Source: Salisapilia sapeloensis CBS 127946
Lineage: Eukaryota; Protista; Oomycota
Length of the DNA stretch: 64,000 bases
Direction: 5' to 3'
Assembly: GCA_023334545.1 (NCBI GenBank)
Contig: JAADVB010000035.1
Coordinates: forward strand, 1 to 64,000
Shown piece after piece: positions 4,601-36,003 of the stretch; positions within the stretch are counted from its first letter, which is position 1, and each line of letters opens with the position of its first letter. The notes beneath the pieces are model-generated. The model made no database searches. It was not told where the DNA came from and saw nothing but the letters and a program-made list of their open reading frames with translations. The position numbers and the translations under genes are program-made.

Positions 4601-5154
4601 ATGCGTTCTCCAGCATGCAGTGGGTGTCGGACCACTGAAAAGACAGAACTGTTCGGAGCTGCAATTCGATTCTTTCTTTTCTTTTTCTTTCTCTTCAGCA
4701 TCGCCGCTCAGATCGTTTCGCTGCGTCGGTGCCAATTTCTCTTCCAAAAGCAATACACGCTCCATTTCCCTCTTTTTCTCATTTTCCAAGATCTGATACT
4801 CTTTTCGCCTACCCCACGTAGATGAACAATTCGCATGCGATCTTTTGCGTCGAAATTACGCAGCTAGAGACACTCTATCGACGCGATTGGAGTCATGACA
4901 ACTCGACACGGATCAGTGCATAGACTTCGCTTTGGTGCTTGGAATGAGCCATCTGCTCTGCTTCGCATCTCGATCCAAAGCTTCTCCCGTCGACAGGAAA
5001 AGGCGTTATGGCGCTAAAGTCAAAAGATACGTTTCGATAAGATTCATGTTCCTTCAAATGCATCTAGAACGTCGCTGAGAAGCCTCTTCGGAGGAGAACC
5101 CCAAGTCCATCATCCAATGCGCCAAGTTTTTGTGCGTCCGTTTCTAAAAAATGA

Positions 5155-6279
<1,125 letters not shown>

Positions 6280-6368
6280 AGCCAGGCTTCTCGTCTTTAG
6301 GATAAATCCTCTTATTAGCGAATACAAAACACTTAATACCTCCCTTGTAAAATTGTTTATTTGCACAC

Positions 6369-13713: not shown

Positions 13714-16700
13714 ATGCTATTCGGGGCTTTACCCATGCGGAGCATGCTCTCCGTGTTGGGAATAGCTGTAGCATGTTGGACACCCGTTCGAGGTTTAGAT
13801 ACTTCCATATTGCAATTTTCGCCGCAGTTCGTGCCGCATCCACCTCCCAATGTGTCTATCTCTGCATACGATGCCAACTCCATGCGTGTGCAGTTTCTGC
13901 CGCCACGAGATGGTGTTGAGAGTGCAAAACCGGAAGGTGACAACGGTGCTCCTGTGATCGGCTATACGATCGAAGTTGCGCGAGGCATGCACGAAGTGCA
14001 CCAGTTCAGCGTCACTGCGTCAGGCGCACTATCCAGCGGAGAATACAAGCTGGAGTTTACCAATGCCGATGGTACGTCGGAGAGTACGCGGTGCATTCCA
14101 TGGGATGCTAGTGAGACGACGTTTGAAATGGCTCTAGAGGAGCTGTCAATCATTGACACAGTCTCTGTAAGTCGATCGGAGCACTCTGGAGAAACGCTTG
14201 GATATGACTATCTAGTCGAGTTCGATGGAGCAGACTTGGTTCGTGGCGAACAGCCGAATGAGTTGCAAGGTGCGGTGGATAATTGCAAGCCAATTAGCCC
14301 TATAAATCGCCAGCTTACTTTTGCGTCGAGCCGTGTGACGCACGGGACACTCGGTTATACACCTGAAATCTGGATGGTCATGACGGATGAGACTACACGC
14401 ACAAAATTAGTCGGAGGACATTTCGATTTGTCTATTGGCTTTGATGGTGGATGGGAAGATACAACCGTGACTGGTACTGTTGATGCTGGATCAAGCATCG
14501 TCCTGACATCCATTTCCATGGTTGGCAAGGTCAATCGTGGTGATAAGGTGCTTATTGGAAATCAACAATTTACAATACATCCAAGCGCTCTTTTCACGGA
14601 TGAAATGATGCCATTGAGCTCGTACCATACTCTTGGAGCTAAAGACGCCAATATCTTTAAGGTTGAGACAGCTATTGGAGACGTATGGGTTGAGCAAGCT
14701 TCGAGTGAAGTCAAAACGGCCGAGGACTTGACAACGTACTTTGCCGCGGATGAACACATAAAGATTGGAGCGTATGAGTTTGCCATCAGTAGCATTACCA
14801 GCACCAAAATCGATTTGCAAGCGATTGGCAGTGGACCAGACAAATGGCCGGATGCTGACCAGAGACACATTACCGCCTATTGCCGGTTAAAGGTACGAGT
14901 CGATGCCAACGCGGACGCTGTGGAGATGAAACGAGCACTTAGTTGGCTGCCTGGAGTCGGTGCAGTGGATGTAAGTCGCCAAGGACCTACCGCTGTCAAT
15001 GGATATCGCTGGTTCATCACGTTTCAGTCTCTCGGCGCGCTCGTGAACTGCCCCCAGTCACCATGTTTACATGCCGATAAAGTAACCGGTATGGATACTC
15101 TGTTAGTGGATGCAGTTGGGGATGCGTGTGTAGACTGTTTGGTTCAGGATATAGTTTGGCAGGCTGGATCTTCAGTCACCCAATCGCAAGCAAGCAATGC
15201 ACTCTTCCCACCTTCTTCTGTCGTTGCCACATATGAGATTGGAGGCGTCGTGAACGAAGTGCAAGAGCTCTGGACTTCTGCCTCTGCGAACGATCTCTTC
15301 GGCACATTTCAAATAAACTTTCTATCAGCGTTGATGGAAGAAGATGTGACTGTCAATCACGATGAAAGCGCAGAGGACTTGCAAACCAAGTTGGAGCTCA
15401 TCCCTTCCATCGGTCGAGTGAACGTCCTTCGCAGTACAAATGACGTGTTTGGGTTCACATGGACAATCACTTTCCTCACTAACACTGGAGACCTGCCGTT
15501 ATTGACTATCTTGAATGAGAAACTAACTGGCACCGATCCTACTGTGTCCGTACAAGAGCGTGTGAAAGGCGTTGGAGTACCTTTTGAAGCTGTAATTGAT
15601 GATCTATCGCCGGAAGAAAGCTACTATGTACGTGCATTCGCTCGCAACAAAAATGGGTTTAGTCTCGGTAGCGAAAGTCTTCAAGTAGTTGGGCGTGGTG
15701 CACTCCCATTCGCGACAACGGTCGGCTCTGCACCAGATCCACCTACGCTCATTGGAAATTGGCCACTCTCAGAAACGCAGGTCAATGTCATGATGCGTGA
15801 GCCGATGTCGAATGGAGATCCGATCGAAAGGTACATTGTGGAATACGCAATGGGATCATCCTTCGGCACAGCTCCTGTCAAAGAATTCCACATCCATAGC
15901 AATGCACCCTTCGATATCGCTGGCTCTTTCCAACTGCAGTACGGAGACGAAAGCCTACCGATGCTACCTGCAGATGCATCTGCTCAAGTTGTGGCAAACG
16001 CACTAAACGCTGTAAAGAACCTTCGACCCGTCCAAGTCTCTCGCTACATGTACGTGTTGACTGGAGATGTTACTAGTGCTGCAAATTCCTTTTCTGCTGC
16101 TGGTAACATGATCGTTACAACGCCTTTAACGAAACATCAGTGCGAGATGCTGTCTGCTGGTTCGATGATTCTATTCGACGAACATGTTTTCGTCGTGAGT
16201 AGTACACCAAAGGTCGATGATGAGGCTGTACATGTTCAAGCTGATCATGGTCAAGCAGACTCCAATCCTGTCGACTCTCGTTTGTTCAAGTTGGACACAA
16301 CTGGAGCAGAGATCGGACCATTTGGGTATCAATGGCTAGTGACTTTTCCCTATGAGGTTGAAGACTTTGCTGGCGGAAACTATCCAGGTCTACAGCTGCA
16401 TCCTTCGCTTTACTCTGTCGAAAGCCAGGTGCCACTGACAGTCGGTTTGACGGATGTGACACCTGGAGTACCACCAGATTACCACGGACAAGTTGTCGTT
16501 AGCACCGCTAGCGACTGTGATATGTACACCATTGGCGCGCCTTCGAATGTACAAATGCTTCAATTTCATGCATCAAAGGCGCTGGTAGATGGAGGATATA
16601 CACTCCAGCTTGGGTCAGAGACGACTGACTGTATTACATTAGATACAATCAATAATGTCGGTGACTTGCGTGATCGTCTGCTCAATGACTTGACGTACGT

Positions 16701-19700
16701 CAAGCGGGTGGATGTTCATAAAGAACGCAATTTCAAAGTCTTGGTGATCGCAGGTAGCGCTGACTCCCACGTGCATACTTTTGACAAAGATACTTTGAAG
16801 ATCACTATCTCGAGTGGCTTGACAGCTTCAGAGGCAGAGATGCTTCAGAAGGATGCGATTATTCAAGTGAGTCGGAATCCAAACGACTTTACGCGCGAAT
16901 CGTGCGAGCTCCAAGTGACAGCACAACCATCTACTGGAAGCTCGATTGTTAGTGTAGCAAATTTCGGTGCATGCGCTTCATTTTCTGGTGAACGACGTAG
17001 CTTGCGTGTGCTTAATTCATATGACTACAAGATCCACTTCTGGGGATCCTACCCTACCGGTCAATGGCCAACATTAAAGATTGTACAAGACGACTTTGGC
17101 AAAGGGAGCTGCCAAGTATGGACTCCATCTCCCAATTCGGTCTACGCGACAGTCCACACAATTCGATACGAAGGCATTTGTGCCAAAGGACAAGAGGGCA
17201 CCCAGACAATATTGGCGGATGCAAAATCTGCCATCACTGGAAGCTTCCAGTTCAGCTACCTCGGCAAGGAGACACCGCTTTTAAGTTTTTCTACGACAAA
17301 AGCGAAAGCCATGCAAGAGCAGCTTGATGCTATTACTGAGGCTGGCATGACCAGTGTGACGATGAGTGCCTTTGGAACCCATGGCAAAGCGTGGCATATT
17401 ACGTTCAACCAAGCACATGATGTGGTGGATTCTATTTACATTAAGCATTCTTTCTTAGCTGGTGACGATGTCTATATCAGTGTCTATCCTACGGTCTTGA
17501 TCTCTACTACGGCTGCAAAAGACGATATTCGTGGTACTTTTAACATCATACTAAATGGACAGACGACAGAAGCAATCGGTTATTCAGCGACGCATGCAAA
17601 GGTTGTTCAGGAGCTTGAAAAAATGCCAGACATTTACTCTGTCATTGCCTTGGGACAAATGAATGCTGGAGACGTAGCTGTGTACGCGCTGGAACTGATA
17701 GCAGATACGCAAGCAAGCAGTTCCATTATCAAGAATGTGCGGCTGAATGGTGACAAAATCGATCCCACGCTATTCCTTGCTCTCGGGGAAGAAATCGTAG
17801 TTAATGGAGAAGAGCGCACTATTACATCGTTGTCACCGGTAGATATTACTTTGGACAGCGGTATCACTACGACGACAATAGACGCCACTGTATATGCTGG
17901 GCTTACTACAAAAGAGACAAAGTTCTTGCCTGGGTTTGTTGGCATATCGGCGCTCACAAAAGTTGTTTCAGCCACCACAGGAAACGATTGGATTATCATG
18001 TCAGACGATCATGGTCTGGATGGAAGTGTAGGCGAGAAGATATACATTCAAGGTCAAGAACTAACGATTGCCGAAGTGAGCGGTGCAGGTGTGCGTGTGA
18101 CGCCCGTATATGCCGGCTCAGACGTCAATGATGCGACTAACAGTGTGTATGTCTTTGACAATAAGCTTCGCACGACGGAAGATGTGACAGCCTTCATACA
18201 AGACAATGACGAAATTTGGATCCGATATAGCGATGCTGACATTGTCCAGTACACTATTCGACATGCGCACGCTGATCATCTGGAGGTGGATGGGGTATTC
18301 AAAGAAAGTTTAGTTAAAGCTTCAGCGCACTACGCAGCCTACGGTCGAAAGTGGTCTCTTGTCTTCCGGTCGTACATTGGCGATCTAAATACAATCGATG
18401 CTCTTCCAGGCAATGACTTGCGAGGAACAGAGGTAAAAATTGGCATCAAAACGCCCAATGCTGTTCCTGCACGCGTTGCTACACTCGGAAACCCAGAAGT
18501 TCAGCAAACAGTTTTGCTACGTGCTAGTGATCCAGCTAATCTAGATGCGGGAGCTACATTTGCACTAACTTTTGATGGCACAACTACTAGTAGCTTAAGC
18601 TGGGATGCCTCCGATGTGGATGTAGAGCAAGCCTTAAAAACAGTAGGTGCTGATGGAGTTACTGTCCAAGCAAAGTCATTAGCAGACAAGGGTTTCTTCC
18701 GAACGATAAACTTTTGGGGGAATTATGCAGCTCGTACTCTTCCGTTGCTTGAAGTGACAGCGTTCAATCCAGGAACTTCTTTAGTCTCTGCACTTGTACA
18801 TGGAAATGCTGGTGTCTCTCGAACAAAGCATTACAATACGATTCTTAATCAAGACGCAGAGTATGTCGTACGTCTGTTTGCAGCCAACTCATTTGGGCTG
18901 AGTACTAGCCTAGAGACGTATTTATTGAAAACATCCACGACGTCAGTGTTTCCAAGTGCTCCACGAGCAGTTAATTTAGGCGAATACCGTGGACCGGATG
19001 CACTCTCGGTGAACTATTTCTCGCCAGGGTACACGGGTGGAAAAGAGATCACTATGTATCGACTCGAGTGGGACTCGTCTCCGACATTCGACAGCTCTAG
19101 CTCCGATTATGGAGCTGCCACCGTTCAAAAGCAAGCAGAGGTGCAGCTTGTCCAGATAAGTTTCAAAAGCGATGTCGATCGAGACGGTTGGTTTACGCTT
19201 TCTTTCGGAGGACAAACTTCTTCTCTACTGCGTTATGACTGCAGTGCTGAGAAGATGAAGGAAGAGATTGCGATGTTAACAGACACGACGAGTATAGGCG
19301 AAGATCCTGTAAAGATCATTCGAAACAAAGTTTCATGGGGATATACGTGGAAAATTACGTTTTTAAATACGCCAGGAGATCTAGCTCTATTACGTGCTGA
19401 TGCTTCACTTCTCTCAGGAGATAGTCCGAGAGTCTTTGTTACAGAAGTTGCAAAGGGCTCAGCGGATATTAGCGTAGGTGAGTTCACGAACGAAGTGCAA
19501 GAAATCTATACCGATGCAGCGACAGAGATGAGTGGTGACTTTAGACTAGAGTTTAATGGTCGAAGGATGATCGACCCAGTTTCGGTGGATGCATCTGCTC
19601 TAGATATGCAGCTCGCTCTACAAGCGCTAACGGATACGTATGCGATTAAAGTGTCAAAACGAGAGCGCAACGTCGAAATAAAGACTGCGATATGGAGCGT

Positions 19701-28700: not shown

Positions 28701-31700
28701 GACACCAAGTGGCGTTCCATCAGCTGTACGCAACTTCCAGTCTGGGCATGCCTTGTATGTTCAGGAAGTACAGGAAGTACGTACGGCAGCAACCTATGTT
28801 TCGGAAGTGCAAACGATCACTACAAGTGCCGCTGAAGTGTCTGAAGTACAAACGATGCTGACAAGTGCTCCGTCAAGTGCGTGTCTGGATAATTCATGCA
28901 TTCATGGCAGCGTTGCTTTCCGTGCACCGATGATCCAAACCATCACTATATCTGGTGAGGCAAACATTAATGACGGTGGTCAAATCAGATTACTTTTCGA
29001 AAGGTATGAGACGGATGAAGCTAACCTCGCAGGAGGTAACGAGGGAAAGCTCATCCCGATTACTGCTGCGGAGACAACTGGTCTACTAGCATGGCCTTTG
29101 GAGGCAAGTTTGATCCAGCAGGAGTTAGAGGGCTTAAGCTCTCTAAGCGTAGGAGATATCATAGTTAAGCAAGAAGATGAAGGAAGTGCTTCTGGCTATG
29201 GAGCAACGTTCAGCGTCTCATTCATCGGAACTCTGGTTGGAGGTCAAACGAATCTTATTCAAGTGCTCCATGAAGCGGATGGATCATGTCCTGAATGTGC
29301 CAAGCTAGAAACGTCTGAAGGTGATTCATGCGACATAAGTGTTTCGATGAACCAAGACCAGGCGATGGGAACGGACACGGCCGTCCAAAAGGTCGTTGTA
29401 AAGGCTGAAAAACGACTTGCAGCAGGTTCTTATAAGTTAGAATTCGATCATCTTGGAGCAATAAGAAGTTCCGAGTGCATTCAATTCGATGCTCCACCTC
29501 GAGGAGAGAATTCACAGACTGTGGAGAATATACTAGAGAGAATGTTGAATATCGATAGCGTCTACGTCACACGCACGGTGGACCAGACGGAAGCTCCGAA
29601 TGGCTTTATCTACTACATTTTCTTTGACGGAAATGCAGTGCACGGTAGCGTGAATAAGATGACAGTCGCATACGACACATGTACCAAGTTCCAAACGGTC
29701 GAGAACAATGTACTTACAGAAATAACTGGCAGTGCTGAGGTCTTTACGATCGCAAAGAAGTTTACGGATATATCGACCAGTACTGCTGAGGATCTAAAAG
29801 AGGATCTGGATCAGCTTCCTGTCTTTGGAAGAGTTGTTACATCCCAGTCGCTCAAGGATGCACAAGGTGGGCTCTTATGGACTGTTGCTTTTGAAGAAGG
29901 ACAAGGCAATCTCCCACAATTCATATGTGTCACTGGAGATGACTTTGAACCAGCAGGGTTTGGCTCATGTATAACATCTACCATTACGGACGGTAATGCT
30001 CTCGATGGCACGTTTGTGATTGAATCTTCCCAACCGATCCCGTATAATGCTGAAGCAGCATTTATAAAGCAAGCGATGGAAGAGATGTCGTGGGTTGGAG
30101 AGGTAGAAGTGACAAGGTCGAGCCCAACACCGCAGTATGGATACTCTTGGACGATTACTTATGTAGATTACCTTGGTGATGTGCCTACGCTATCGATTGC
30201 AAGCTCTCTTACTGGCGCCGGTAGCCAAATTGAAGTCAGAGAAGACCGTAAAGGTAATCGCATCGGTGGATCCTTTACACTGTCGTACATGGGGATCGAA
30301 ACGAGTGCCATTGCCTGCACGGCAAAGGCTATGGCAGTGGATACCGGAAACGATGGTACGTCCATGCAAGAGAAACTGGAGGCTCTGAAGAATGTTGGTC
30401 CAGTACATGTCGTACGATCCATGCAGGACAAGCAGGGAGGCTATTCGTGGTTAATTACCTTCCTCGACGATAAGCAAAATGTCGGTGATATTGCACTTTT
30501 AAAAAGCAACGGTATGAGTTTAACAGGTGCAGGTGTCGTAGCATTTACACGAGAAATTAGAAAAGGAGCAAAGGCTGCAGGAAACCAGTTGTGGGTTTCT
30601 TTCGATCCACCAGCTACTGATCGTGGCATGTCCATCGCCAAGTATAGAGTACGTTGGGATACGAATGCTGGTTTCCAAGCAGATCCTAAGCAAGCTGAAA
30701 TAACCAACAGCGAGCTCTTATATCGATACCAGCACATTGTGACTAAGGCTCCGAGCATTTCATGGTCTGCGCAGCATCAACAACCTGTTCCGGCTACGCA
30801 GCACATTATATTCAATACTGGAACCAGTGGAACTGCCTTCAGTGTGACGTTCCGTGGCCAGACGACGGTTGGATCGATGGTAGTGGATTCATCACCAGCA
30901 GCCGCATCCACGACTGACGATCTGCTTCAAAAGCTTGAGAATCTACATGCGATCGGACCTGGTGCATTGACGATTCTACCTACTTCTTCACCAATAAGTC
31001 CCGGCATGAGTGTCGAAGTTACCTTCCATGGTGTTCCGGGAGACGTCCCGCCCCTATCTTTCTCCAACAGTGTCGCTACCATACAAGAGAGTACAAGTAT
31101 TACAGGATACACACCGTTCCGCAAAGAGCAAGTTGTGCTTGACTGCAAAGGAACGACAACTACTGTTACGTTTACGACTGGTAGCCAAAGTACGGATATT
31201 GCTGAGGGGGTTTCACTATCACAGGCAGAAGCGAAGCTCGAGGAAATATTCGGAGTGGAAGCTGGAAGCATCCGAGTGATTAGTACGGACGGCCATGAAT
31301 ATTTCTGTAGCGACGCAGCCGACACGGCTACTATCGTCTTTGATAGAGTCTATGGTGAACAGGAATTGGTTGTGGCGAATCTGGATAAAGTTACGGAAGC
31401 ATGCATCAAAGGATATAAGTACGACACGTCAATTGCAAAGATGAGCGGTACGTTCCAATTAGGCTACAAGGGAGTGTTTACGCCGATGCTGAATGCCGAA
31501 TCGTCTGCTGATGCTATCCGTTATGCACTTGAAAACCTCCCTGCTATCTCGACGATTGAAGCGACAAGAGATCGCTCTTCCCAACCAATTGTCAATCAGG
31601 GTACTGTGGATGCTGTTCAAGGTCAAGTGTACGTGACTTGCTCTGATGCTTCATGTGATTTTGCCTCGGGTGCGTATGGTCTTCCTGGTGATGTCATTCT

Positions 31701-34700
31701 AATCGATGGAACGTGGTATACCATTCGAACGGATACAGTGTCTCCTGCCTTACCATCGGATCGACTTTTCTTGGGTGACTTGAATGGCCGTGAGATTGGA
31801 TACCAAGGTCCAAGCACAAATGGACTCACTGTGTACGAATGGGCAAAAGGATATGTATGGACGGTTGGGCTACTCCTTGTGGACGAGTTAGAATACATCC
31901 AAACACGCGTTCCTCACTTCAATCCGCTTGACGCACACGTTAGTGTTACCGGAAGTTCTTGTGATAAATGCCACTACGTCCCAGGTCAATCGTCCAGTAC
32001 ACTCGTTCGGGGACAGAGCTATTACCTCGATGCGAATGCTTTTAACTCCAATGGGTACGGTGATGATATTGTACCTATTCAAGCGACCCCACGTCAGGTG
32101 CCGAACGCTCCATCCAATGTGAATATTGTCGTCATCTCTGGTGTTGAGATTGAGGTCTTTTTTTCCCCACCGTATCTTTCTGACTCGGACATTTCAGCCT
32201 ACATTGTGCAGTGGGATACGAATCCTGACTTTAAGCACGGACTACCAATCTGTGAAGCATGTGCCGTCGGGTTGAATGGAAATCAGCTCACGGTCACTGA
32301 GTCGTCTATTGAAAACTTACCATTAACCGATGTCAAGTTCACGATTGCAGATGAAAACTGTCAGATGATGCTCAAGTCTGTTGTCGGCACAAAGTTCACG
32401 GTGGAAGCAGGGCATGGCTGTAGTGAGTTTGAGGATGGCAACTACCCGATGTACTATTACACGTATGAGCCTACTTACATTACGAACTTTGATAAGCAAG
32501 CTTCAGTCTACAGACACTTGCTCAAGGTTCCTACTCCTCTAACAAAGTACTTTGTTCGCGTGGCAGCTGAGAACTCTGTCGCAGTTCAAAAGGTTGCGTA
32601 CGATGGAAATCCACCGAATAATCGCCAGTGGAGTACGACGCTGTCTGCTATTACAGCTGACACTGTCCCTGATAAACCACTAAGCGTTGATCTATTGCAG
32701 TTTTCAGGCTCAGCGCTTGAGCTACAAATCTTACCGCCAGTTCGAGATGGTAAAGGAGAAGAAGGGAATGCGATTGAAAAGTATTGGATCTTGTATGACA
32801 CTTCTCCGACGTATGATACGGAAGGTATAGCTCCGACGGAAGTCAATGCAAACTCGCTCGAGTACTTGTCAGATGGAAGACGGATATACCACTTGACGGG
32901 CCTCGAGACGGGTGTCGTGTACTATGTTCAAGTCAAGCTACGCAATTCAGTCGGTCTTAGCACGGCAATGGCTGCGCAATCGGCTATTGCACCGGAAGAA
33001 ACACCTTCTGAAACTAGTCTGGTTCGACTATCAAGTCCTAGGAGCTCATCTACGCCGATCACCACTGCGACAGTAACATGGCAGCCACCGACTCTAAACG
33101 GCGGACGCGATGTTGATAGCTACGTGGTGGAATGGTGGACGAAGAAGACGAGACAGGAAGTTCAGATTATTGAAATTACATGGGACCAAGCACCAGCTGC
33201 TGAGAAGTTCCAATTGAAGTTTAAAAAAGGCACGACTGAGATGTTTCCTCTGCATATTACTGCAGAAAACGTTCGCAATTCACTTATGAATGTGATGGTG
33301 GACGGAAACCCAGTGATCAAGCATGTCTCGGTTACTCGCAGAGATATTAACGCGGGTACTGGTCGACAATGGATCGTGACGTTTACGGATGAAGTGAATA
33401 ACGCCGGTGATCAACCGATGATACAGATCGCTTTCGACAGTACCTACAACTACCTCAATGGTCGAGTGTTTGAATCGATATCAGGCATCCAAGTACCTTT
33501 GAGTAACTTCCCTGGTACACCGGAGGTGCAAGTGCTAACGATCTACCATCCTACGGAAACGGTGACAGGGTTCTTCCGTCTAAGCTTTGGTGGCTCAGGC
33601 TGGTCCAACCACTTGTCTGCAGAGAAAGTAACTACTGTGGAGCTTGAGGCAGCTCTTGAAGCACTCCCGACGATCGGTCAAGTAACCGCGAATGAAGAGA
33701 CTGGACAAGCGTTTGAACGCATTTGGACGATCACATTCAACTCCAATGTCGGCAATCTACCTGCTATCGTTGTGGATGACACGGAGATCTTACCAGACAC
33801 TAATGCTTTCGTCGGTGTTAAAGACGGAGATAACGCAGTGACAAGTACTGGAGTGCTCTGTCTGCCGAATCCAACTGGGTGTGGAGGATCTTGGCCGGAT
33901 GGTGTGACTGATATCGCTGATAAAGCAAGAATCGGGGAGGTAGCAAGTGGGTATGGTATCTTTGAAACGCAAAGTGCAGATACCTTATCGTACACAATCT
34001 CTGGATTGACGCCAGGCGTACTGTACTATGCTTCTGTCGCTGCCAAGAACTACCGTGGCTTAGGTCCACGTGCGGCATCAATGCCAGAAAGTATCATGCC
34101 ACGACTACAAGTACCTAACGCACCTACGAATGTCTTGGTGGATGTCAAGTACGGGTCTGCGACGCAGCTTACCGTTTCATACGATGCACCGACTAGCGAC
34201 GGTGGTGCTCCTGTGTGGATGTACCACATAGAGTACGACCAGTCATTTAAGTTCGACAGTGGTGGAGAGCAAGTTCACTGGTGTCCCACAGCACCTGTGA
34301 ATGCTGTGTGGACAGTCCAGACGACTACATCTACTTCTTCAGAGCCCATTGGACGAGGCTTCTTTAAGCTGGAGCTCACACGAAAGGGAATCACCGAAAC
34401 GACGCATCCGATTCCATGGGATGCTGTCTCCATGGCAGATGAAGAAGAAGGTAACTCGGATGTCGTCCATTCGAAAGTTTTCTGTACGCCATGCTCCGAT
34501 TGTAGTGACAAGTGCGAGTCGGATGAAGCGACTGGTGATGGACGAGTCGAGAATTCTGGGTCGATGCAGTCGAAACTAGAACACTTGGGCATGATTTCAG
34601 ATGTGAAAATCAAGCGGACGCCAAATAGCGGAAACGATGGCGGATATACGTGGTCTGTCACGTTCTTAGATATTGGCGATGATTTCAATCTAAACGTAGC

Positions 34701-36003
34701 AGCTACTAATGGAAAAGCCTTTGAGTGCGCTAGTGGATCCTGTAATGGTGCAACGTATGACCTTGTCATCCGGCAGCAGGTGCACGGCACGGATCCACCG
34801 GCATGCATTGGCAGTCAGGTCGTTCCGCAGAATTACGGAGCTCTTACACAAGGCAAATTCTACTATGTACGCGTCTATGCTTACAACGAGATCGGCTACA
34901 GCCTCCCGGCCTTGGCACCAAGTCCACAGAAACCTATGGTGGTTCCTGGTCCACCGAATAGTGTGGTACTGAAGGTTGCTAGCATAGCTGAGCTCAAGGT
35001 GTCTGTAAACCCACCGTCGGACAATGGTGGAGACACGATCGTCAAGTACGAAGTCGAATGGGCACTCGACAACGCATTTAGCTCTGACGTCAAGACTGGT
35101 AACCTCGTCAACCTTGCTGGTGGAGCACCGTACCACTACTTTATCACTGGATTGGTCAAAGGTACTTTCTATTATGTCCGTGTCCGCGCTGGGAACTCCC
35201 AGGGTGTGGGGCAGTATCAGCTCTCTTCCCCACAATCTTTGAATCCGAGTACGAAACCTGGAGCGCCGAGTAAAGTTCGTCTCGGAGTAACATCGTCGAC
35301 GCTGCTGACGGTACAGTGGCGCCCACCAACTGATGATGGTGGAGATAGTATCACAGCATACGTCATTCAATGGGACATCTCGGGCAACTTTGATTCGTAC
35401 AACTTGGACGACAATACGAAGACAATCTCCGACATTTCTCAGCGGTCGTACACGTTTAGTGTTCTCTCTCAAAACGTTTATTACGTTCGAGTGAGTGCTG
35501 TAAATGCCAATGGTATCGGCACACCTCAAGCATCTGAGCCGCTATCTGCCCAACCGGCTTTCACTCGTCCTGGCAAGCCTCATAGTCTTCGAGCTGAAAG
35601 CACTGCTGCAGGTGAGCTGCTGATTGAGTGGCAGCCACCTATAATCCCAGCACATGGCATTCCTTGTGGAGGTACGCTACGAAATCCAGCTTCTTGTCCA
35701 CTCGAGAACGGACTGGAAGTTGTGTTTGGTGGCAACAAGTTGGGCACGTACTTGGTCCATTGGTCGGAAGATAGCAAGTTTAGTGGTCCGGCCATTGACG
35801 AAGTGAAAGAGACGTCATATCGAGTCACTGGTCTCAATTCCGGCACGACGTACTACGTACGAGTACTTGCGGAGAATACGAACCGAGAGAAAGGTGACTT
35901 TTGCTTCACAGAGAACAAGGACGGATACTACTGTCCGAATGACCTTGTACTCGAAGATGGATCCGTCGTTCACTCGAACACGGTCTCGGCGACGGTCTTG
36001 TAG
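13714..36003 (+). CDS. Giant secreted protein, 7429 aa, intronless: about 15 FN3 domains (many split), about 37 'EVQ...GxFxLxF...WxxTF' modules and interspersed 'GDxIxIxG' modules; no C-terminal anchor
   Basis: One 22.3-kb ORF with a signal-peptide-like start (MRSMLSVLGIAVACWTPVRG). FN3 hallmarks (W.PP..DGG..I..Y.IEW; Y.I.GL.PG..YYVRV.A.N..G.G) and a recurring ~100-aa module counted by eye. Ends ...NTVSATVL with no hydrophobic TM or GPI stretch. Confidence 0.95.
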   Translation: MLFGALPMRSMLSVLGIAVACWTPVRGLDTSILQFSPQFVPHPPPNVSISAYDANSMRVQFLPPRDGVESAKPEGDNGAPVIGYTIEVARGMHEVHQFSVTASGALSSGEYKLEFTNADGTSESTRCIPWDASETTFEMALEELSIIDTVSVSRSEHSGETLGYDYLVEFDGADLVRGEQPNELQGAVDNCKPISPINRQLTFASSRVTHGTLGYTPEIWMVMTDETTRTKLVGGHFDLSIGFDGGWEDTTVTGTVDAGSSIVLTSISMVGKVNRGDKVLIGNQQFTIHPSALFTDEMMPLSSYHTLGAKDANIFKVETAIGDVWVEQASSEVKTAEDLTTYFAADEHIKIGAYEFAISSITSTKIDLQAIGSGPDKWPDADQRHITAYCRLKVRVDANADAVEMKRALSWLPGVGAVDVSRQGPTAVNGYRWFITFQSLGALVNCPQSPCLHADKVTGMDTLLVDAVGDACVDCLVQDIVWQAGSSVTQSQASNALFPPSSVVATYEIGGVVNEVQELWTSASANDLFGTFQINFLSALMEEDVTVNHDESAEDLQTKLELIPSIGRVNVLRSTNDVFGFTWTITFLTNTGDLPLLTILNEKLTGTDPTVSVQERVKGVGVPFEAVIDDLSPEESYYVRAFARNKNGFSLGSESLQVVGRGALPFATTVGSAPDPPTLIGNWPLSETQVNVMMREPMSNGDPIERYIVEYAMGSSFGTAPVKEFHIHSNAPFDIAGSFQLQYGDESLPMLPADASAQVVANALNAVKNLRPVQVSRYMYVLTGDVTSAANSFSAAGNMIVTTPLTKHQCEMLSAGSMILFDEHVFVVSSTPKVDDEAVHVQADHGQADSNPVDSRLFKLDTTGAEIGPFGYQWLVTFPYEVEDFAGGNYPGLQLHPSLYSVESQVPLTVGLTDVTPGVPPDYHGQVVVSTASDCDMYTIGAPSNVQMLQFHASKALVDGGYTLQLGSETTDCITLDTINNVGDLRDRLLNDLTYVKRVDVHKERNFKVLVIAGSADSHVHTFDKDTLKITISSGLTASEAEMLQKDAIIQVSRNPNDFTRESCELQVTAQPSTGSSIVSVANFGACASFSGERRSLRVLNSYDYKIHFWGSYPTGQWPTLKIVQDDFGKGSCQVWTPSPNSVYATVHTIRYEGICAKGQEGTQTILADAKSAITGSFQFSYLGKETPLLSFSTTKAKAMQEQLDAITEAGMTSVTMSAFGTHGKAWHITFNQAHDVVDSIYIKHSFLAGDDVYISVYPTVLISTTAAKDDIRGTFNIILNGQTTEAIGYSATHAKVVQELEKMPDIYSVIALGQMNAGDVAVYALELIADTQASSSIIKNVRLNGDKIDPTLFLALGEEIVVNGEERTITSLSPVDITLDSGITTTTIDATVYAGLTTKETKFLPGFVGISALTKVVSATTGNDWIIMSDDHGLDGSVGEKIYIQGQELTIAEVSGAGVRVTPVYAGSDVNDATNSVYVFDNKLRTTEDVTAFIQDNDEIWIRYSDADIVQYTIRHAHADHLEVDGVFKESLVKASAHYAAYGRKWSLVFRSYIGDLNTIDALPGNDLRGTEVKIGIKTPNAVPARVATLGNPEVQQTVLLRASDPANLDAGATFALTFDGTTTSSLSWDASDVDVEQALKTVGADGVTVQAKSLADKGFFRTINFWGNYAARTLPLLEVTAFNPGTSLVSALVHGNAGVSRTKHYNTILNQDAEYVVRLFAANSFGLSTSLETYLLKTSTTSVFPSAPRAVNLGEYRGPDALSVNYFSPGYTGGKEITMYRLEWDSSPTFDSSSSDYGAATVQKQAEVQLVQISFKSDVDRDGWFTLSFGGQTSSLLRYDCSAEKMKEEIAMLTDTTSIGEDPVKIIRNKVSWGYTWKITFLNTPGDLALLRADASLLSGDSPRVFVTEVAKGSADISVGEFTNEVQEIYTDAATEMSGDFRLEFNGRRMIDPVSVDASALDMQLALQALTDTYAIKVSKRERNVEIKTAIWSVTFAYLQGEELVGSGDVFIIRVATTNLQDASASVNIAEKVYGTDPFRYSIEGLRPNVRYYLHVMAYNSMGFGSANSPMSTAMTCSQASPPTSIAVNVVSEQALQVAWSTAADANLGCATTKYSIEWYHPNAVQEVQLITTSATQGIREVQRLVNFASTESLNGYFQLSFGGERTQNLAWNAPAEGRGSVKERLERLSTIGTVQVTRQVSRRVVPNLFVTVSGDQVSVVVASSSSDFNDLTLPLDNTVWILGQPYQVNAKSQYALTIDQTVTIDAPVPIFINANGYEWIITFTSGHVGPQDIMEAHPTDNWSGNKGDIYCERVITGMEPMSGTFTVSFAHDGFSETTPPLAHDISANKMKDALEQLITIGEVDVARSPNGYGYNWLVTFLSELGDLAMLEVDGTELHGPNVDVHTATIETGVLPTGYCEQNGLSGSPALVSVPGSDIYTISALTKGAEYVIRVRGYNEEGYGYAGYSTPAIQVPRTKPTPPTSIELMALSQSMVKVIWSPPLDDGGAVISSYILEWDTLSTFANAASPNYDYRGILNVSPDDETPYYYNIPVIATNAHYIRIYAVNDQGTSDAGMSAQLSIVPANQVPGRPENVVAEALSNSVILVEWSPPSIEKNFYSGDGGLPITQYMIEWDTVDTFDNSIKTATVNAPATLYEIGGDDPITGVRSSELIEGTEYYIRVTAFNAEGSGASQVSDPEYVKAEKKAPTPPEELTLTVLPPDDVRAEWNFPAYDGGNTLMSYEIEWDDQDDFISGQMSSANVPIVREVQSVAISSDVVNEEQFIDATVEVINEQQTIRTKFDGKDEIQIVHTINNPVVDEVQYVRTKATDRNEVQELRLTAPDKNEIQAIRTSLPTDVLEIQTVKLVTKRVPEVQTWSISIATADPNDITGSLRLNFDNTACTHCQGMRTSSWTDDVIGALQVTDPADGLPIMQNGIDSLSNVDTGSIVVTNDRQDMNDGTFLFSFTFTFSGDDVIGDVASLTVDQNVFVNSNKVTNVDPTATPGPEGSEFSDNAASVFDLTYTCETYSDPNAILLVSSHCDPRSVGSSICDSCVTDFDGTQITLNQAVTVDADTWLVAGVCTFVVKDAVTGGTTITIVGNGKDVGQHCSPLDFDGVLLDLYEARQHKTSIPTKSSAYELTSAEQLYSLLSPNVQSVQVSEESFIDANYAGKTYKIAFLRPGTIPLLECDVSNVVLTSGNSADTRCEVVRDTPGSMIKGRFQVGLEAESLRNTGNIKMSDYLPWDATESMMKAALEAVEFTNSNGATESVFGTVQVKRSTYFVGNTKWSGGFTWQITFLSRGMNIPAMTVVNELLDVATQGVALEVEDADDTLLSPTGGAQNGNEIEGGIKFQYNGNTEECFVGATHIPPAELQIDDLVDGDLATCLGPLFPGGENDIVVTRSSVTQAGGFTWSITFVGQDVGGDVDEIEIVSSSLVPSSTERRIVESIPGNQLGGTFLLSFNGETTGPISATASANEIMSQLNGLRTIYPSRVEVSEGATQETASSQVQAKEWLITFKSSTWVDPEADHSTLVEGNWVGSPARWDDVWPTTGYSKAWGRQVGPLWAKNIRLACIKGGLTTTADDNTEDCQTGEEIPGQGPINGNFKLILDSQAGNLPAGHAMSKQMTVTSGLIAHNARATRIDSGGDGTSMQEILEEMENVGTVDVSRSSVDVDSGTYYWTITFLRDAYGPCEQEEESGSGERLCNSPGDIPRLAFDADATLMADGIVCDEDGASDGSNTCDGLTTQHGAVLRGDFTQLQVTGDPGVSTRYTLTPDCANINCPDPITEMSINSGEEQISTHLKPGDRFTLGTSICIFTVESVTTAPVKVVVDSLTCGDLDTNSARGLHMLLPWNAKESLVKRVLEASADVSKEVDEWIGGRKVLVERTIQGKYGEVSWSIRFISNPGYTPPGAGDLNDLDPVFEPSPISISYQVTVTPNQHGSDELSGFYTIDYYTNKPRDVSFDEPEDRLMRKINEFSTIGRVSVKRYRYPSVDTGCEDSDCSAGWDDLPVLQNRPRGGYRWQIRFMQSTGEYEGYTFPPGSGDASPLTVTKGSLAGASASVDLVNNQDGSPPVRGVFQLGRDSSITPELGYASSYKSVKEAIEDMDLYGEVDVVRSYLLTQKLRSVSASVTKDGSTAVVTTDTDIRQHIMPGDVIRFGVESSNNLIGTNGDTPLVSDLSMSYGTVSMGSPIVTAEEEVLNELYPDMHVRIDGLVYTIQQSGREVQALFVSTTVTEWDSDVLATSAFQLQFIGRGTSQTTNCLQFDALPSDVETELNAVNQNMLLPGMFAADDIKVTRSGPHISADNLRKSYTYYIYFQGSSVAGDVTTLDVASCAASDTSADASFETETMRHGGKVAHQRLSLATDSGYIDDPNGYYKLSIGAAKTNCLLWGGPASTIETELATLDVTKAVVSTSGTGVSVTAIQRLRLTSNTPVTTPQNGLFKLGLKLDGETTLTPCLDYGLSADSLENHLNTLIGKENVDHHIRVTRSGDGTASSGYGFEYLIHFEGPVSGGLSTILGSIKELQVYDLGKGACDPAAGGDPAINVETIREGKAGYTYDIYFLEYSAAAVPKLEIITDEAECPSSGWTQVGGNVRMPKIEQLELGGSSEVQTLTLQDSRDAAKPSYRLSFDGVETGGPCLLLGDLPSTLQQELATIPVIGTDGVYVSRDILTSASNGYVYSVTFVGKQVTGKVPLLSVIEYDDACSGQTDIATFDTAVERTVSGGSSPGSFALTTLYDGESPGEHIVYHIGQLFSVQEEQIEKYKIIIHNGGPTLIDTNAGTYRLEVDSHVTTSIMWNALESEVEEKIVTAISADKGDVVVTRKLDSAAAPNGYVYNVYFSARKWSSIDLAFLDDTSFNDGTVTVSEITPGGSEEAEPLLRQSIPLADLATPTTSARYLANSAANVNVYKVNGFFWTVKFKSAIGNIPALEKTTSNLLGGDLTVIDDFIRGSESDSFTIQNLIPGIPYYVRVAASSATGKGAFTPVKVVTPSGVPSAVRNFQSGHALYVQEVQEVRTAATYVSEVQTITTSAAEVSEVQTMLTSAPSSACLDNSCIHGSVAFRAPMIQTITISGEANINDGGQIRLLFERYETDEANLAGGNEGKLIPITAAETTGLLAWPLEASLIQQELEGLSSLSVGDIIVKQEDEGSASGYGATFSVSFIGTLVGGQTNLIQVLHEADGSCPECAKLETSEGDSCDISVSMNQDQAMGTDTAVQKVVVKAEKRLAAGSYKLEFDHLGAIRSSECIQFDAPPRGENSQTVENILERMLNIDSVYVTRTVDQTEAPNGFIYYIFFDGNAVHGSVNKMTVAYDTCTKFQTVENNVLTEITGSAEVFTIAKKFTDISTSTAEDLKEDLDQLPVFGRVVTSQSLKDAQGGLLWTVAFEEGQGNLPQFICVTGDDFEPAGFGSCITSTITDGNALDGTFVIESSQPIPYNAEAAFIKQAMEEMSWVGEVEVTRSSPTPQYGYSWTITYVDYLGDVPTLSIASSLTGAGSQIEVREDRKGNRIGGSFTLSYMGIETSAIACTAKAMAVDTGNDGTSMQEKLEALKNVGPVHVVRSMQDKQGGYSWLITFLDDKQNVGDIALLKSNGMSLTGAGVVAFTREIRKGAKAAGNQLWVSFDPPATDRGMSIAKYRVRWDTNAGFQADPKQAEITNSELLYRYQHIVTKAPSISWSAQHQQPVPATQHIIFNTGTSGTAFSVTFRGQTTVGSMVVDSSPAAASTTDDLLQKLENLHAIGPGALTILPTSSPISPGMSVEVTFHGVPGDVPPLSFSNSVATIQESTSITGYTPFRKEQVVLDCKGTTTTVTFTTGSQSTDIAEGVSLSQAEAKLEEIFGVEAGSIRVISTDGHEYFCSDAADTATIVFDRVYGEQELVVANLDKVTEACIKGYKYDTSIAKMSGTFQLGYKGVFTPMLNAESSADAIRYALENLPAISTIEATRDRSSQPIVNQGTVDAVQGQVYVTCSDASCDFASGAYGLPGDVILIDGTWYTIRTDTVSPALPSDRLFLGDLNGREIGYQGPSTNGLTVYEWAKGYVWTVGLLLVDELEYIQTRVPHFNPLDAHVSVTGSSCDKCHYVPGQSSSTLVRGQSYYLDANAFNSNGYGDDIVPIQATPRQVPNAPSNVNIVVISGVEIEVFFSPPYLSDSDISAYIVQWDTNPDFKHGLPICEACAVGLNGNQLTVTESSIENLPLTDVKFTIADENCQMMLKSVVGTKFTVEAGHGCSEFEDGNYPMYYYTYEPTYITNFDKQASVYRHLLKVPTPLTKYFVRVAAENSVAVQKVAYDGNPPNNRQWSTTLSAITADTVPDKPLSVDLLQFSGSALELQILPPVRDGKGEEGNAIEKYWILYDTSPTYDTEGIAPTEVNANSLEYLSDGRRIYHLTGLETGVVYYVQVKLRNSVGLSTAMAAQSAIAPEETPSETSLVRLSSPRSSSTPITTATVTWQPPTLNGGRDVDSYVVEWWTKKTRQEVQIIEITWDQAPAAEKFQLKFKKGTTEMFPLHITAENVRNSLMNVMVDGNPVIKHVSVTRRDINAGTGRQWIVTFTDEVNNAGDQPMIQIAFDSTYNYLNGRVFESISGIQVPLSNFPGTPEVQVLTIYHPTETVTGFFRLSFGGSGWSNHLSAEKVTTVELEAALEALPTIGQVTANEETGQAFERIWTITFNSNVGNLPAIVVDDTEILPDTNAFVGVKDGDNAVTSTGVLCLPNPTGCGGSWPDGVTDIADKARIGEVASGYGIFETQSADTLSYTISGLTPGVLYYASVAAKNYRGLGPRAASMPESIMPRLQVPNAPTNVLVDVKYGSATQLTVSYDAPTSDGGAPVWMYHIEYDQSFKFDSGGEQVHWCPTAPVNAVWTVQTTTSTSSEPIGRGFFKLELTRKGITETTHPIPWDAVSMADEEEGNSDVVHSKVFCTPCSDCSDKCESDEATGDGRVENSGSMQSKLEHLGMISDVKIKRTPNSGNDGGYTWSVTFLDIGDDFNLNVAATNGKAFECASGSCNGATYDLVIRQQVHGTDPPACIGSQVVPQNYGALTQGKFYYVRVYAYNEIGYSLPALAPSPQKPMVVPGPPNSVVLKVASIAELKVSVNPPSDNGGDTIVKYEVEWALDNAFSSDVKTGNLVNLAGGAPYHYFITGLVKGTFYYVRVRAGNSQGVGQYQLSSPQSLNPSTKPGAPSKVRLGVTSSTLLTVQWRPPTDDGGDSITAYVIQWDISGNFDSYNLDDNTKTISDISQRSYTFSVLSQNVYYVRVSAVNANGIGTPQASEPLSAQPAFTRPGKPHSLRAESTAAGELLIEWQPPIIPAHGIPCGGTLRNPASCPLENGLEVVFGGNKLGTYLVHWSEDSKFSGPAIDEVKETSYRVTGLNSGTTYYVRVLAENTNREKGDFCFTENKDGYYCPNDLVLEDGSVVHSNTVSATVL

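What the first reader, a model, noticed from the sequence alone, without database searches (positions are those of the whole stretch)
13840..34900. Discontinuous FN3 domains acting as clamps around very large inserts
The first half of an FN3 domain (P..P..V...W.PP..GG..I..Y.IEW) is repeatedly separated from the second half (Y.I.GL....YYVRV.A.N..G.G). Approximate pairs: 13840-13980 with 15583-15665 (about 535 aa between); 15733-15860 with 18835-18900 (about 990 aa); 18950-19100 with 19825-19920; 19960-20080 with 21030-21120; 21840-21975 with 28595-28690 (about 2200 aa); 33000-33140 with 33985-34065; 34115-34255 with 34840-34900. One domain appears split twice (28710, 30580-30670, 32000-32060). 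If the halves reassemble, the chain forms an FN3 backbone bearing closed side arms, a branched or bottle-brush shape rather than titin-like beads on a string.
Basis: partly seen in the sequence, partly recalled or inferred. Interest (0 to 1): 0.85.

Follow-up and report, generated by a model that had tools for sequence, protein, structure and literature searches.

The report
Giant oomycete protein with nested FN3 domains
One 22-kb oomycete gene encodes an 801-kDa secreted protein in which nine of fifteen fibronectin-III domains are each cut in two by inserted arms of 88 to 2,200 residues, so it is probably a tree-like nested protein rather than beads on a string.

Summary
One uninterrupted ORF (window 13714-36003, + strand, 7,429 aa) carries 15 FN3 domains. 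Six are intact. Nine are split into an N-half (strands A-B-C, sometimes C') and a C-half (E-F-G), in strict N,C,N,C order. It missed one split domain (FN3-9, 88-aa insert). Its doubly split domain is probable but unproven.

AlphaFold2 models two split units and their neighbours confidently (pLDDT 85, pTM 0.67). A normal titin FN3 tandem superposes on split FN3-12 plus intact FN3-13 (TM 0.73) across the 194-aa insert. I could not see model coordinates, so closure in 3D rests on this one unit.

The inserts hold about 36 copies of a ~100-aa alpha/beta module that Pfam and NCBIfam lack. The module matches the repeats of mycobacteriophage Bxb1 gp23 and, weakly, stramenopile tubular-mastigoneme proteins. 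Some modules are themselves split by a ~60-aa beta element or by another module.

The layout is conserved in 14 full-length oomycete orthologues and recurs in 55 of 148 other module-bearing proteins. N-glycosylation sites are almost purged (3 against about 57 expected). The biological role is unknown; I infer an extracellular scaffold or adhesin.

The parts
13714..36003 (+). Single-exon gene for the giant protein (7,429 aa, 801 kDa)
   Evidence: ORF list and translation. Orthologues of 7,354-7,597 aa at 42-48% identity in Globisporangium, Pythium, Lagenidium, Phytophthora, Plasmopara.
13714..13794 (+). Signal-peptide-like N-terminus (aa 1-27)
   Evidence: Most hydrophobic 19-residue window of the protein; no other segment looks like a transmembrane helix. 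Read by eye, no predictor run.
13831..13974 (+). FN3-1 N-half (aa 40-87)
13975..15603 (+). Arm 1 (543 aa): 3 modules, one split by 2 small beta elements
15604..15666 (+). FN3-1 C-half (aa 631-651)
15730..15873 (+). FN3-2 N-half (aa 673-720)
15874..18819 (+). Arm 2 (982 aa): 5 modules. Three host small beta elements; module 1263-1321/1533-1577 is split by three of them.
18820..18909 (+). FN3-2 C-half (aa 1703-1732)
   Evidence: no Pfam hit alone
18952..19137 (+). FN3-3 N-half (aa 1747-1808)
   Evidence: no Pfam hit alone
19138..19818 (+). Arm 3 (227 aa): 2 modules
19819..19923 (+). FN3-3 C-half (aa 2036-2070)
19960..20145 (+). FN3-4 N-half (aa 2083-2144)
20146..21033 (+). Arm 4 (296 aa): 2 modules, the first hosting a small beta element
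21034..21147 (+). FN3-4 C-half (aa 2441-2478)
21151..21828 (+). FN3-5 and FN3-6, intact (aa 2480-2705)
21841..22005 (+). FN3-7 N-half (aa 2710-2764)
22006..28602 (+). Arm 7 (2,199 aa). It opens with a run of about 9 short EVQ/EIQ strand repeats (22006-22338). It then holds about 14 modules and 4 small beta elements, and includes a module inside a module (aa 4377-4428 / 4436-4533 / 4558-4586).
28603..28680 (+). FN3-7 C-half (aa 4964-4989)
   Evidence: (Pfam 24.5 bits)
28705..28761 (+). Candidate strand A of FN3-8 (aa 4998-5016)
   Evidence: Position directly after FN3-7. AF2 strand at 5006-5012, pLDDT about 80. Not detectable by profiles.
28762..30579 (+). Arm 8a (606 aa), apparently in the A-B turn: 3 EVQ mini-strands, then 5 modules
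30580..30690 (+). FN3-8 strands B-C (aa 5623-5659)
   Evidence: match starts at template column 13-16
30691..31983 (+). Arm 8b (431 aa): 2-3 modules, the last split by a small beta element
31984..32067 (+). FN3-8 C-half (aa 6091-6118)
32095..32238 (+).
32239..32502 (+). Arm 9 (88 aa): one small beta element, no module
32503..32586 (+). FN3-9 C-half (aa 6264-6291)
   Evidence: Weak with the local HMM; 95-97% by profile-profile comparison
32659..32997 (+). FN3-10, intact (aa 6316-6428)
33007..33150 (+). FN3-11 N-half (aa 6432-6479)
33151..33975 (+). Arm 11 (275 aa): 2 modules plus a Cys-rich linker
33976..34104 (+). FN3-11 C-half (aa 6755-6797)
34108..34260 (+). FN3-12 N-half (aa 6799-6849)
34261..34842 (+). 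Arm 12 (194 aa): one module interrupted by a Cys-rich stretch
34843..34914 (+). FN3-12 C-half (aa 7044-7067)
34942..35883 (+). FN3-13, -14, -15, intact (aa 7077-7390)

Best explanation
The gene encodes a secreted 801-kDa oomycete protein built by recursive domain insertion.

Spine. Fifteen FN3 domains are joined head to tail by ordinary short G-to-A junctions. With FN3 domains of about 3.5-4 nm (textbook value), the spine would be roughly 50-60 nm long.

Arms. Nine FN3 domains carry an inserted arm of 88-2,199 residues between strand C or C' and strand E. One of them also seems to carry an arm in the A-B turn. The arms hold 79% of the residues. They consist of about 36 copies of a ~100-residue beta-beta-alpha-beta-beta-beta-beta module that begins with a conserved E-V-Q strand. 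Some modules are in turn interrupted by a ~60-residue beta element (14 copies) or by another module. Nesting therefore reaches three levels and probably four.

Closure. Each arm closes when the two FN3 halves pair (B with E, C with F). Tension along the spine would then pass through the FN3 domains only, while the arms are displayed sideways.

Shown or predicted: the split pattern and its conservation are shown directly from the sequences; FN3 closure for one unit (FN3-12) is a structure prediction, not an experimental result.

Inferred: closure of the other eight units, the secretory route, and an extracellular scaffold or multivalent adhesin role. A link to the zoospore surface or flagellar hairs is only a lead.
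For: Split pattern and complementarity of halves.

Balanced brackets and tandem-type junctions. RPTP-sigma and titin chains align straight across the C-half to next N-half junctions.

Structure prediction: pLDDT 85.3 and pTM 0.67 for aa 6312-7182; pLDDT 77.9 and pTM 0.53 for aa 4992-6127. Predicted strands fall on the expected FN3 strand sequences.

Foldseek: 3lpw_A has TM 0.73 over 384 columns, which equals FN3-12 plus FN3-13 including the insert. Four-FN3 targets (fibronectin 7-10, LAR) align over the whole 871 residues.

Modules: 38-39 HMM hits in the protein, none outside the ORF and none in a shuffled copy. The module profile hits Bxb1 gp23 (9d93) at E 8.7e-28 by sequence and 4e-8 by fold. 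It hits 9ufe 'tubular mastigoneme protein' at 2e-6.

Nesting: module halves complement each other around small-element hits, and that region is modelled at pLDDT 84-91.

Conservation: the same order of pieces occurs in 14 full-length orthologues and partly in three distant 6-7 thousand-aa proteins. Segment lengths agree within about 1-4% among the 14 full-length oomycete orthologues. An N-modules-C pattern occurs in 55 of 148 other module-bearing proteins.

Secretory route: signal-like N-terminus and no transmembrane segment. N-x-S/T sequons number 3 against 56.7 +/- 6.5 expected and are also depleted in all oomycete orthologues. Control motifs and six neighbouring genes are at expectation.
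Against: No experimental data exist for this protein or its orthologues. PITG_01932 appears in one paper only as 'too long for DeepLoc', and PITG_01931/01932 are absent from its supplementary tables.

Model coordinates and PAE were not available. Contact between halves is shown in 3D only through one Foldseek superposition (FN3-12).

The fold search of the second model returned no FN3 match bridging the 431- and 606-residue inserts, so the doubly split FN3-8 is unverified in 3D.

Alignments for AF2 had only 18 sequences.

Some halves are individually weak: FN3-2 C, FN3-8 C and FN3-9 C have no Pfam hit alone.

The small beta element's HMM was built from the same 14 copies it finds in this protein. 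Its independent support is 2-5 hits per orthologue and hits in 28 of 148 other proteins.
Confidence: 0.78

Rival explanations
1. Neighbour pairing. Each C-half folds with the N-half that follows it directly in sequence, giving a circularly permuted FN3 (E-F-G then A-B-C). The protein would then be an ordinary beads-on-a-string chain and no long-range closure would be needed.
For: C-halves and the next N-halves are contiguous, 0-25 residues apart.
Against: This leaves six orphan halves (N1, C4, N7, C9, N11, C12) because they border the chain start or intact FN3 domains. The junctions look like those between intact FN3s and align with normal tandem junctions in titin and RPTP-sigma. They are too short to return from the C-terminal pole of an FN3 to its N-terminal pole (topology, established knowledge). 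Foldseek places N12 and C12 in one FN3 next to FN3-13.
Confidence: 0.03
2. Relic halves. The half-FN3 segments are decayed remnants or linkers that do not pair, and each half packs against local module sequence or stays loosely structured.
For: Each half alone scores below Pfam's threshold, and three C-halves give no Pfam hit.
Against: Halves keep FN3 core signatures and positions across orthologues that are only 42-50% identical. AF2 block means of 85-95 pLDDT cover the halves of FN3-11 and FN3-12. Complementary halves always occur in pairs.
Confidence: 0.07
3. Closure in trans. N-halves pair with C-halves of other molecules (3D domain swapping), so the split FN3s polymerise the protein into a mesh or fibre instead of closing their own arms.
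For: Closing an arm of 982 or 2,199 residues within one chain carries an entropic cost (inference). The module also occurs in polymeric assemblies: the Bxb1 tail-tip cage and the mastigoneme shaft.
Against: AF2 of a single chain closes the units confidently. Short arms of 88-296 aa would close within the chain far faster than between chains. Nothing tested here bears on oligomerisation.
Confidence: 0.1

Closest known systems
Titin / fibronectin / RPTP-type tandem FN3 arrays
   Same: The FN3 sequence family is the same: Pfam fn3 110 and 159 bits, and titin chains are the best PDB sequence hits. The short G-to-A junctions are the same. A titin tandem superposes on FN3-12 plus FN3-13 at TM 0.73.
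   Different: In those proteins every domain is contiguous. Here 9 of 15 are discontinuous, and 79% of the residues lie inside FN3 loops.
Insulin receptor / IGF1R FnIII-2 with its insert domain (from my own knowledge of the receptor structures; not tested here beyond an IRR chain appearing)
   Same: An FN3 domain is interrupted in the C-C' region by a long insert and still folds.
   Different: The receptor has one insert of about 120 residues that is largely unstructured and is cleaved by furin. Here there are ten inserts of 88-2,199 residues made of folded repeat modules, themselves nested.
Recursive domain insertion, e.g. the SI3 region of cyanobacterial RNA polymerase beta-prime (PMC13114784)
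   Same: The same A1-B1-C-B2-A2 nesting logic, in which an inserted domain acts as host for a further insert.
   Different: That survey of 48,551 insertion events reports inserts consistently smaller than their hosts. Here a ~100-residue host carries up to 2,199 residues. The host is an extracellular FN3 and the pattern repeats nine times in one chain.
Repeat domains of mycobacteriophage Bxb1 gp23 'tail tip cage' (PDB 9d93)
   Same: The inserted module is the same sequence and fold family: profile E 8.7e-28 with the same E-V-Q...G-x-F-x-L start, and Foldseek E 4e-8.
   Different: It is a phage tail protein of 685 residues with tandem repeats and no FN3 host.
Stramenopile tubular mastigoneme proteins (PDB 9ufe: 'tubular mastigoneme protein', OCM5)
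   Same: One copy of the same module, at profile E 2e-6 and 1.3e-3. The organism group (stramenopiles) is the same.
   Different: They are ~366-residue proteins. Published mastigoneme proteins carry EGF-like domains, and none is detected here. No evidence places the giant protein in flagellar hairs.

Membership tests
Fibronectin type III (Pfam PF00041) | Match to the whole profile above the gathering score | tested here: met
   Intact copies: 110 and 158.9 bits against a cut-off of 25. Six full-length hits with the local HMM.
Fibronectin type III (Pfam PF00041) | For split copies: the two pieces cover complementary, non-overlapping parts of the profile | tested here: met
   Pfam: N pieces on profile 1-14 to 36-49, C pieces on 45-56 to 77-83, each 12.8-24.5 bits alone. 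hhalign places all 18 pieces at 84-98% probability.
Fibronectin type III fold | Both halves form one seven-strand sandwich in 3D | tested here: inconclusive
   Met for FN3-12 in a predicted model (3lpw_A TM 0.73 over 384 columns). For FN3-8 and FN3-11 only high pLDDT is available. The other six units were not modelled. No coordinates or PAE were available.
Titin-like beads-on-a-string FN3 array | Every domain contiguous in sequence | tested here: not met
   9 of 15 FN3 domains are interrupted by 88-2,199 residues.
Bxb1 gp23-type alpha/beta repeat module (no Pfam or NCBIfam model) | Sequence-profile and fold match to the solved repeats | tested here: met
   E 8.7e-28 over three or more repeats. 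Foldseek E 4.3e-8, probability 1.00. No Pfam or NCBIfam family, and only weak PHROG tail-protein hits.
Stramenopile mastigoneme proteins (Mas/OCM) | EGF-like domains and a size of roughly 40-64 kDa | tested here: not met
   No EGF family was found in the protein. Its size is 801 kDa. Only the module is shared, weakly.
Stramenopile mastigoneme proteins (Mas/OCM) | Localisation to the hairs of the anterior flagellum | not testable with these tools
   No proteomic or localisation record was found for this gene or for PITG_01931/01932.
Nested domain insertion (A1-B1-C-B2-A2) | The inserted domain is itself split into complementary pieces around a further domain | tested here: met
   Module pieces covering HMM 5-55 and 56-99 flank three small beta elements (aa 1263-1577). 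Pieces covering 12-58 and 62-90 flank a whole module (aa 4377-4586). The aa 5904-6056 case is modelled at pLDDT 84-91.

The most novel reading that the evidence does not exclude
The protein is a recursively nested, tree-like extracellular machine. Its FN3 'clasps' can close only after hundreds to thousands of residues of arm have been made and folded. The near-total purge of N-glycosylation sites would reflect that unusual folding route in the ER. It would be a so far unrecognised structural component of the stramenopile zoospore surface or flagellar-hair apparatus, with which it shares its repeat module.
Probability: 0.15. Interest if true: 0.85.

Novelty: new variant of a known kind. Interest (0 to 1): 0.62.

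Why it matters
Domain insertion is common, but a recent survey reports inserts smaller than their hosts (PMC13114784). Here a 100-residue FN3 hosts up to 2,199 residues, nine times in one chain, with further nesting inside the arms.

If the closure is real, it raises three questions:
- Folding: a half-sandwich must wait for minutes in the ER before its partner is made.
- Mechanics: only the spine would bear load.
- Annotation: domain predictors report only the few intact FN3s, so such proteins are called 'titin' or 'hypothetical'.

The gene is conserved at about 7,400 residues across oomycetes, a group that includes major crop pathogens, and has never been studied. The inserted module has no curated family although a profile finds it in at least 11,720 representative proteins. 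It links phage tail structures with stramenopile flagellar hairs.

Tried and rejected
Curated families for the module: Pfam, NCBIfam and PHROGs give nothing, or only weak PHROG tail-protein, POTRA and HMA-like partial hits.

Model coordinates: they are not exposed, since /data holds FASTA files only. I therefore could not read contacts or PAE.

Fold search for the doubly split FN3-8: no FN3 hit bridged the inserts; only Bxb1 gp23 was significant. The viral library gave only phage tail and uncharacterised proteins.

ROS1/Sevenless as a precedent for split FN3: the paper describes domains in sequence and does not use the words split, insertion or discontinuous. Rejected as a precedent.

Function from the literature: PITG_01932 is mentioned only as too long for DeepLoc, and PITG_01931/01932 are absent from that paper's supplements. 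A P. parasitica zoospore membrane proteome lists giant FN3 or 'titin' proteins, but I could not establish orthology.

Phylogenetic profiling against loss of flagella: no hits from Hyaloperonospora, Peronospora or Bremia. There were also none from the flagellated Albugo or Aphanomyces, and the search has length windows, so this is uninformative.

Source species: the best identities are about 45-48% to both Phytophthora and Pythium and 37% to Saprolegniales, for the giant gene and for a neighbour. It is therefore an oomycete lineage not in the database.

Residue covariation between halves: I did not attempt it because there are too few independent sequences.

N-glycosylation-site depletion as a property of the whole module family: rejected. 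The 148 representatives range from 0 to 3.6 times expectation.
Full report
**What is there.** The flagged region lies inside one uninterrupted ORF, window 13714-36003 on the + strand. It encodes 7,429 residues (801 kDa). The neighbouring ORFs are eukaryotic: a kinase with HEAT repeats, a USP/DUSP deubiquitinase, a CEP104-like TOG protein with ankyrin repeats, a histone deacetylase fragment and a FYVE protein. There are no tRNA genes.

The giant protein has full-length orthologues of 7,354-7,597 residues at 42-48% identity in Globisporangium, Pythium, Lagenidium, Phytophthora and Plasmopara, and at 37% in Saprolegnia. A neighbouring gene shows the same identity pattern, and both genes share a contig in [Pythium] brassicae. 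The window therefore comes from an oomycete lineage that the database does not hold.

**Checking the observation.** I built an HMM from five intact FN3 copies of the protein and searched the protein with it. It returned six full-length FN3 hits, nine hits confined to the first half of the model and nine confined to the last third. The halves alternate strictly N, C, N, C. A shuffled copy of the protein gave at most one hit. Strict alternation is one of 48,620 possible orders.

The independent Pfam fn3 model agrees. Isolated N-halves fall on profile positions 1-14 to 36-49, and isolated C-halves on 45-56 to 77-83. Each half scores below the gathering threshold on its own, which is why standard annotation reports only the intact copies.

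Profile-profile comparison is stronger. I compared 15-orthologue sub-alignments of each half with alignments of intact FN3 domains. All nine N-halves land on template columns 1 to 44-68 at 92-98% probability. All nine C-halves land on columns 53-69 to 93-109 at 84-98%.

It missed FN3-9 (aa 6128-6175 with 6264-6291), which carries an 88-residue insert. The ten inserts measure 543, 982, 227, 296, 2,199, 606, 431, 88, 275 and 194 residues, together 79% of the protein.

**Do the halves reassemble?** Four arguments say yes.

- Every C-half is followed within 0-25 residues by the next N-half or by an intact FN3, exactly as in tandem FN3 arrays. Titin and RPTP-sigma chains align straight across these junctions.
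- The brackets balance. The rival idea that each C-half pairs with the N-half directly after it leaves six orphan halves, because intact FN3 domains or the chain start flank them.
- FN3 topology (established knowledge) puts strands B and E in one sheet and C and F in the other, so neither half can form the sandwich alone.
- AlphaFold2 supports it. I modelled aa 6312-7182 (intact FN3-10, split FN3-11, split FN3-12, intact FN3-13) with an 18-sequence alignment. The result was mean pLDDT 85.3 and pTM 0.67, with block means of 85-95 over the half-domains.

I could not read coordinates, but the Foldseek search of that model is informative. The 197-residue titin A77-A78 tandem (3lpw_A) aligns over 384 columns with a TM-score of 0.73 per target. 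Only FN3-12 plus FN3-13 (aa 6799-7179, 381 residues) fits that span, so the alignment bridges the 194-residue insert and both halves of FN3-12 superpose on one titin domain. Four-domain FN3 fragments of fibronectin and LAR align over the whole 871 residues.

Closure is therefore shown, at prediction level, for one unit. It is supported by confidence values for two more and inferred for the remaining six.

**The doubly split domain.** The B-C piece of FN3-8 (aa 5623-5659) begins at template column 13-16, so it lacks strand A. A P-x-x-V-type segment (aa 4998-5016) follows directly after FN3-7, where the next strand A would normally lie. In the second AF2 model (aa 4992-6127, pLDDT 77.9, pTM 0.53) residues 5006-5012 form a strand at pLDDT about 80. 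The piece is too short for profile detection. Foldseek found no FN3 match bridging the two inserts. I rate this probable, not shown.

**What the inserts are.** An iterated HMM finds 38-39 pieces of a ~100-residue module, all inside this ORF. The motif is E-V-Q strand, G-x-F-x-L-x-F, a helix, I-G-x-V-x-V-x-R, G-Y-x-W-x-I-T-F, G-D-x-P-x-L. AF2 gives it a beta-beta-alpha-beta-beta-beta-beta layout. No Pfam or NCBIfam model covers it.

A 17-copy profile of the module matches three solved structures by sequence:

| PDB entry | Molecule | E-value |
|---|---|---|
| 9d93 | Bxb1 gp23 'tail tip cage', three or more repeats | 8.7e-28 |
| 9ufe | 'tubular mastigoneme protein' | 2e-6 |
| 9ufe | OCM5 | 1.3e-3 |

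The fold search confirms gp23 at E 4e-8. Against 1.84 billion representative proteins the profile finds 11,720 at E up to 1e-3 and 1,026 at 1e-30. Many of these are thousands of residues long.

**Nesting goes deeper.** Several modules are themselves discontinuous.

- Pieces covering HMM 5-55 and 56-99 (aa 1263-1321 and 1533-1577) flank three copies of a ~60-residue beta element. That element is marked by G-[DE]-x-[IV]-x-[IV]...[FY]-T-[IV].
- Three other modules contain one such element inside their envelope.
- Pieces covering HMM 12-58 and 62-90 (aa 4377-4428 and 4558-4586) flank a complete module.
- An orphan N-piece (aa 4067-4122) and an orphan C-piece (aa 4917-4951) would balance if they pair around about 780 residues. 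This is bracket logic only.

The small element's HMM is circular within this protein. It does, however, find 2-5 copies in each orthologue and hits in 28 of 148 other module-bearing proteins. FN3-9 hosts the small element directly. The two longest arms open with runs of short E-V-Q strands (about nine at aa 2765-2875, three at aa 5017-5060). Those in the second run are modelled as strands at pLDDT 83-88. Their role is unexplained.

**Conservation and generality.** The order of N-halves, modules, C-halves and intact FN3s is the same in 14 full-length orthologues. It is partly kept in three distant 6,100-6,900-residue proteins. Segment lengths agree within about 1-4% among the 14 full-length oomycete orthologues. 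Among the 148 best module-bearing representatives, 94 contain FN3 pieces and 55 show an explicit N-modules-C pattern. One is an 853-residue protein that is a single FN3 split by six modules. FN3 hosting this module is thus a recurrent design, not a peculiarity of one gene.

**Location and function.** The N-terminus looks like a signal peptide, and no other segment looks like a transmembrane helix.

N-x-S/T sequons are strikingly depleted. There are 3 against 56.7 +/- 6.5 expected (minimum 37 in 200 shuffles). Control motifs are at expectation. All oomycete orthologues are depleted (5-16 against 49-76). Six neighbouring cytosolic or nuclear ORFs are at expectation. This argues that the protein passes through the ER and that N-glycans are selected against. 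The depletion is not a property of the whole module family.

I infer an extracellular scaffold or multivalent adhesin, in which the FN3 spine bears load and the arms are displayed sideways. The shared module with mastigoneme proteins makes a zoospore or flagellar-hair role a testable lead, but nothing here shows it. The protein lacks the EGF domains of known mastigoneme proteins. I found no expression or localisation data.

**Comparison with what is known.** Domain insertion occurs in about 20% of multidomain proteins. Six-level nesting is described in cyanobacterial RNA polymerase, but inserts are reported to be smaller than their hosts (PMC13114784). The insulin receptor's FnIII-2 carries one ~120-residue, largely unstructured insert (my own knowledge). 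ROS1/Sevenless, a top structural hit, is described with domains in series.

This case uses a known principle at an unusual scale. A small extracellular host carries inserts up to 22 times its own size, nine times in one chain, with at least three nesting levels. I class it as a new variant of a known kind.

**Verdict.** The biological role is unknown. Interest 0.62.

Noticed in passing
window 13714-36003 (whole protein); the three remaining sites at aa 46, 2304, 2541: N-glycosylation sequons (N-x-S/T) are almost purged: 3 against 56.7 +/- 6.5 expected. All oomycete orthologues are also depleted (5-16 against 49-76). Control motifs and six neighbouring ORFs are at expectation. Among 148 other module-bearing proteins the ratio ranges from 0 to 3.6, so the depletion is lineage-specific.
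   Followed up: partly
window 22006-22338 (aa 2765-2875) and 28762-28893 (aa 5017-5060): Runs of about nine and three short E-V-Q / E-I-Q strand repeats (about 12 residues each) open the two longest arms. In the second run AF2 models them as beta strands at pLDDT 83-88. Their partner strands and role are unknown.
   Followed up: partly
window 26800-27471 (aa 4377-4586) and 25912-28566 (aa 4067-4951): A module sits inside a module (N-piece, whole module, C-piece). There is also an orphan N-piece and an orphan C-piece about 780 residues apart. They would balance if they pair, giving a fourth nesting level.
   Followed up: partly
14 sites, e.g. window 14476-14829, 17659-18300, 20350-20514, 31591-31743, 32251-32484: A ~60-residue beta element (G-[DE]-x-[IV]-x-[IV]...[FY]-T-[IV]) is inserted in modules and once directly in FN3-9. 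It has no family assignment. It is also found in orthologues and in 28 of 148 other module-bearing proteins.
   Followed up: partly
window 38429-39928, minus strand: A 499-residue Lys/Glu-rich ORF without a Pfam hit lies here. Its purine-rich codons explain the local GC- and AT-skew anomaly, the short tandem repeats and the overlapping ORFs on the opposite strand.
   Followed up: partly
window 9450-13253 (-), 43718-46639 (+), 51076-51759 (+), 54669-57645 (+), 57814-62856 (+): Neighbouring eukaryotic genes: kinase with HEAT repeats, USP/DUSP/ubiquitin, an HDAC fragment, WW plus kinase, and ankyrin plus CEP104-like TOG. Several Pfam matches start mid-profile, so introns or upstream exons are likely. 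In some Phytophthora annotations the WW-kinase and TOG genes are fused, and the giant gene is fused to the kinase.
   Followed up: partly
locus L001:7770-18331: A metagenome contig carries an 853-residue protein that is one FN3 split by six modules. It is followed directly by a gene called at 14,824 residues that runs off the locus.
   Followed up: no
literature: PMC12223298, supplementary file 1: The P. parasitica zoospore membrane proteome lists PPTG_04587 (10,566 aa, 'Titin') with high spectral counts, and the FN3 proteins PPTG_01093 and PPTG_08770. I could not establish whether any of them is related to this gene.
   Followed up: partly
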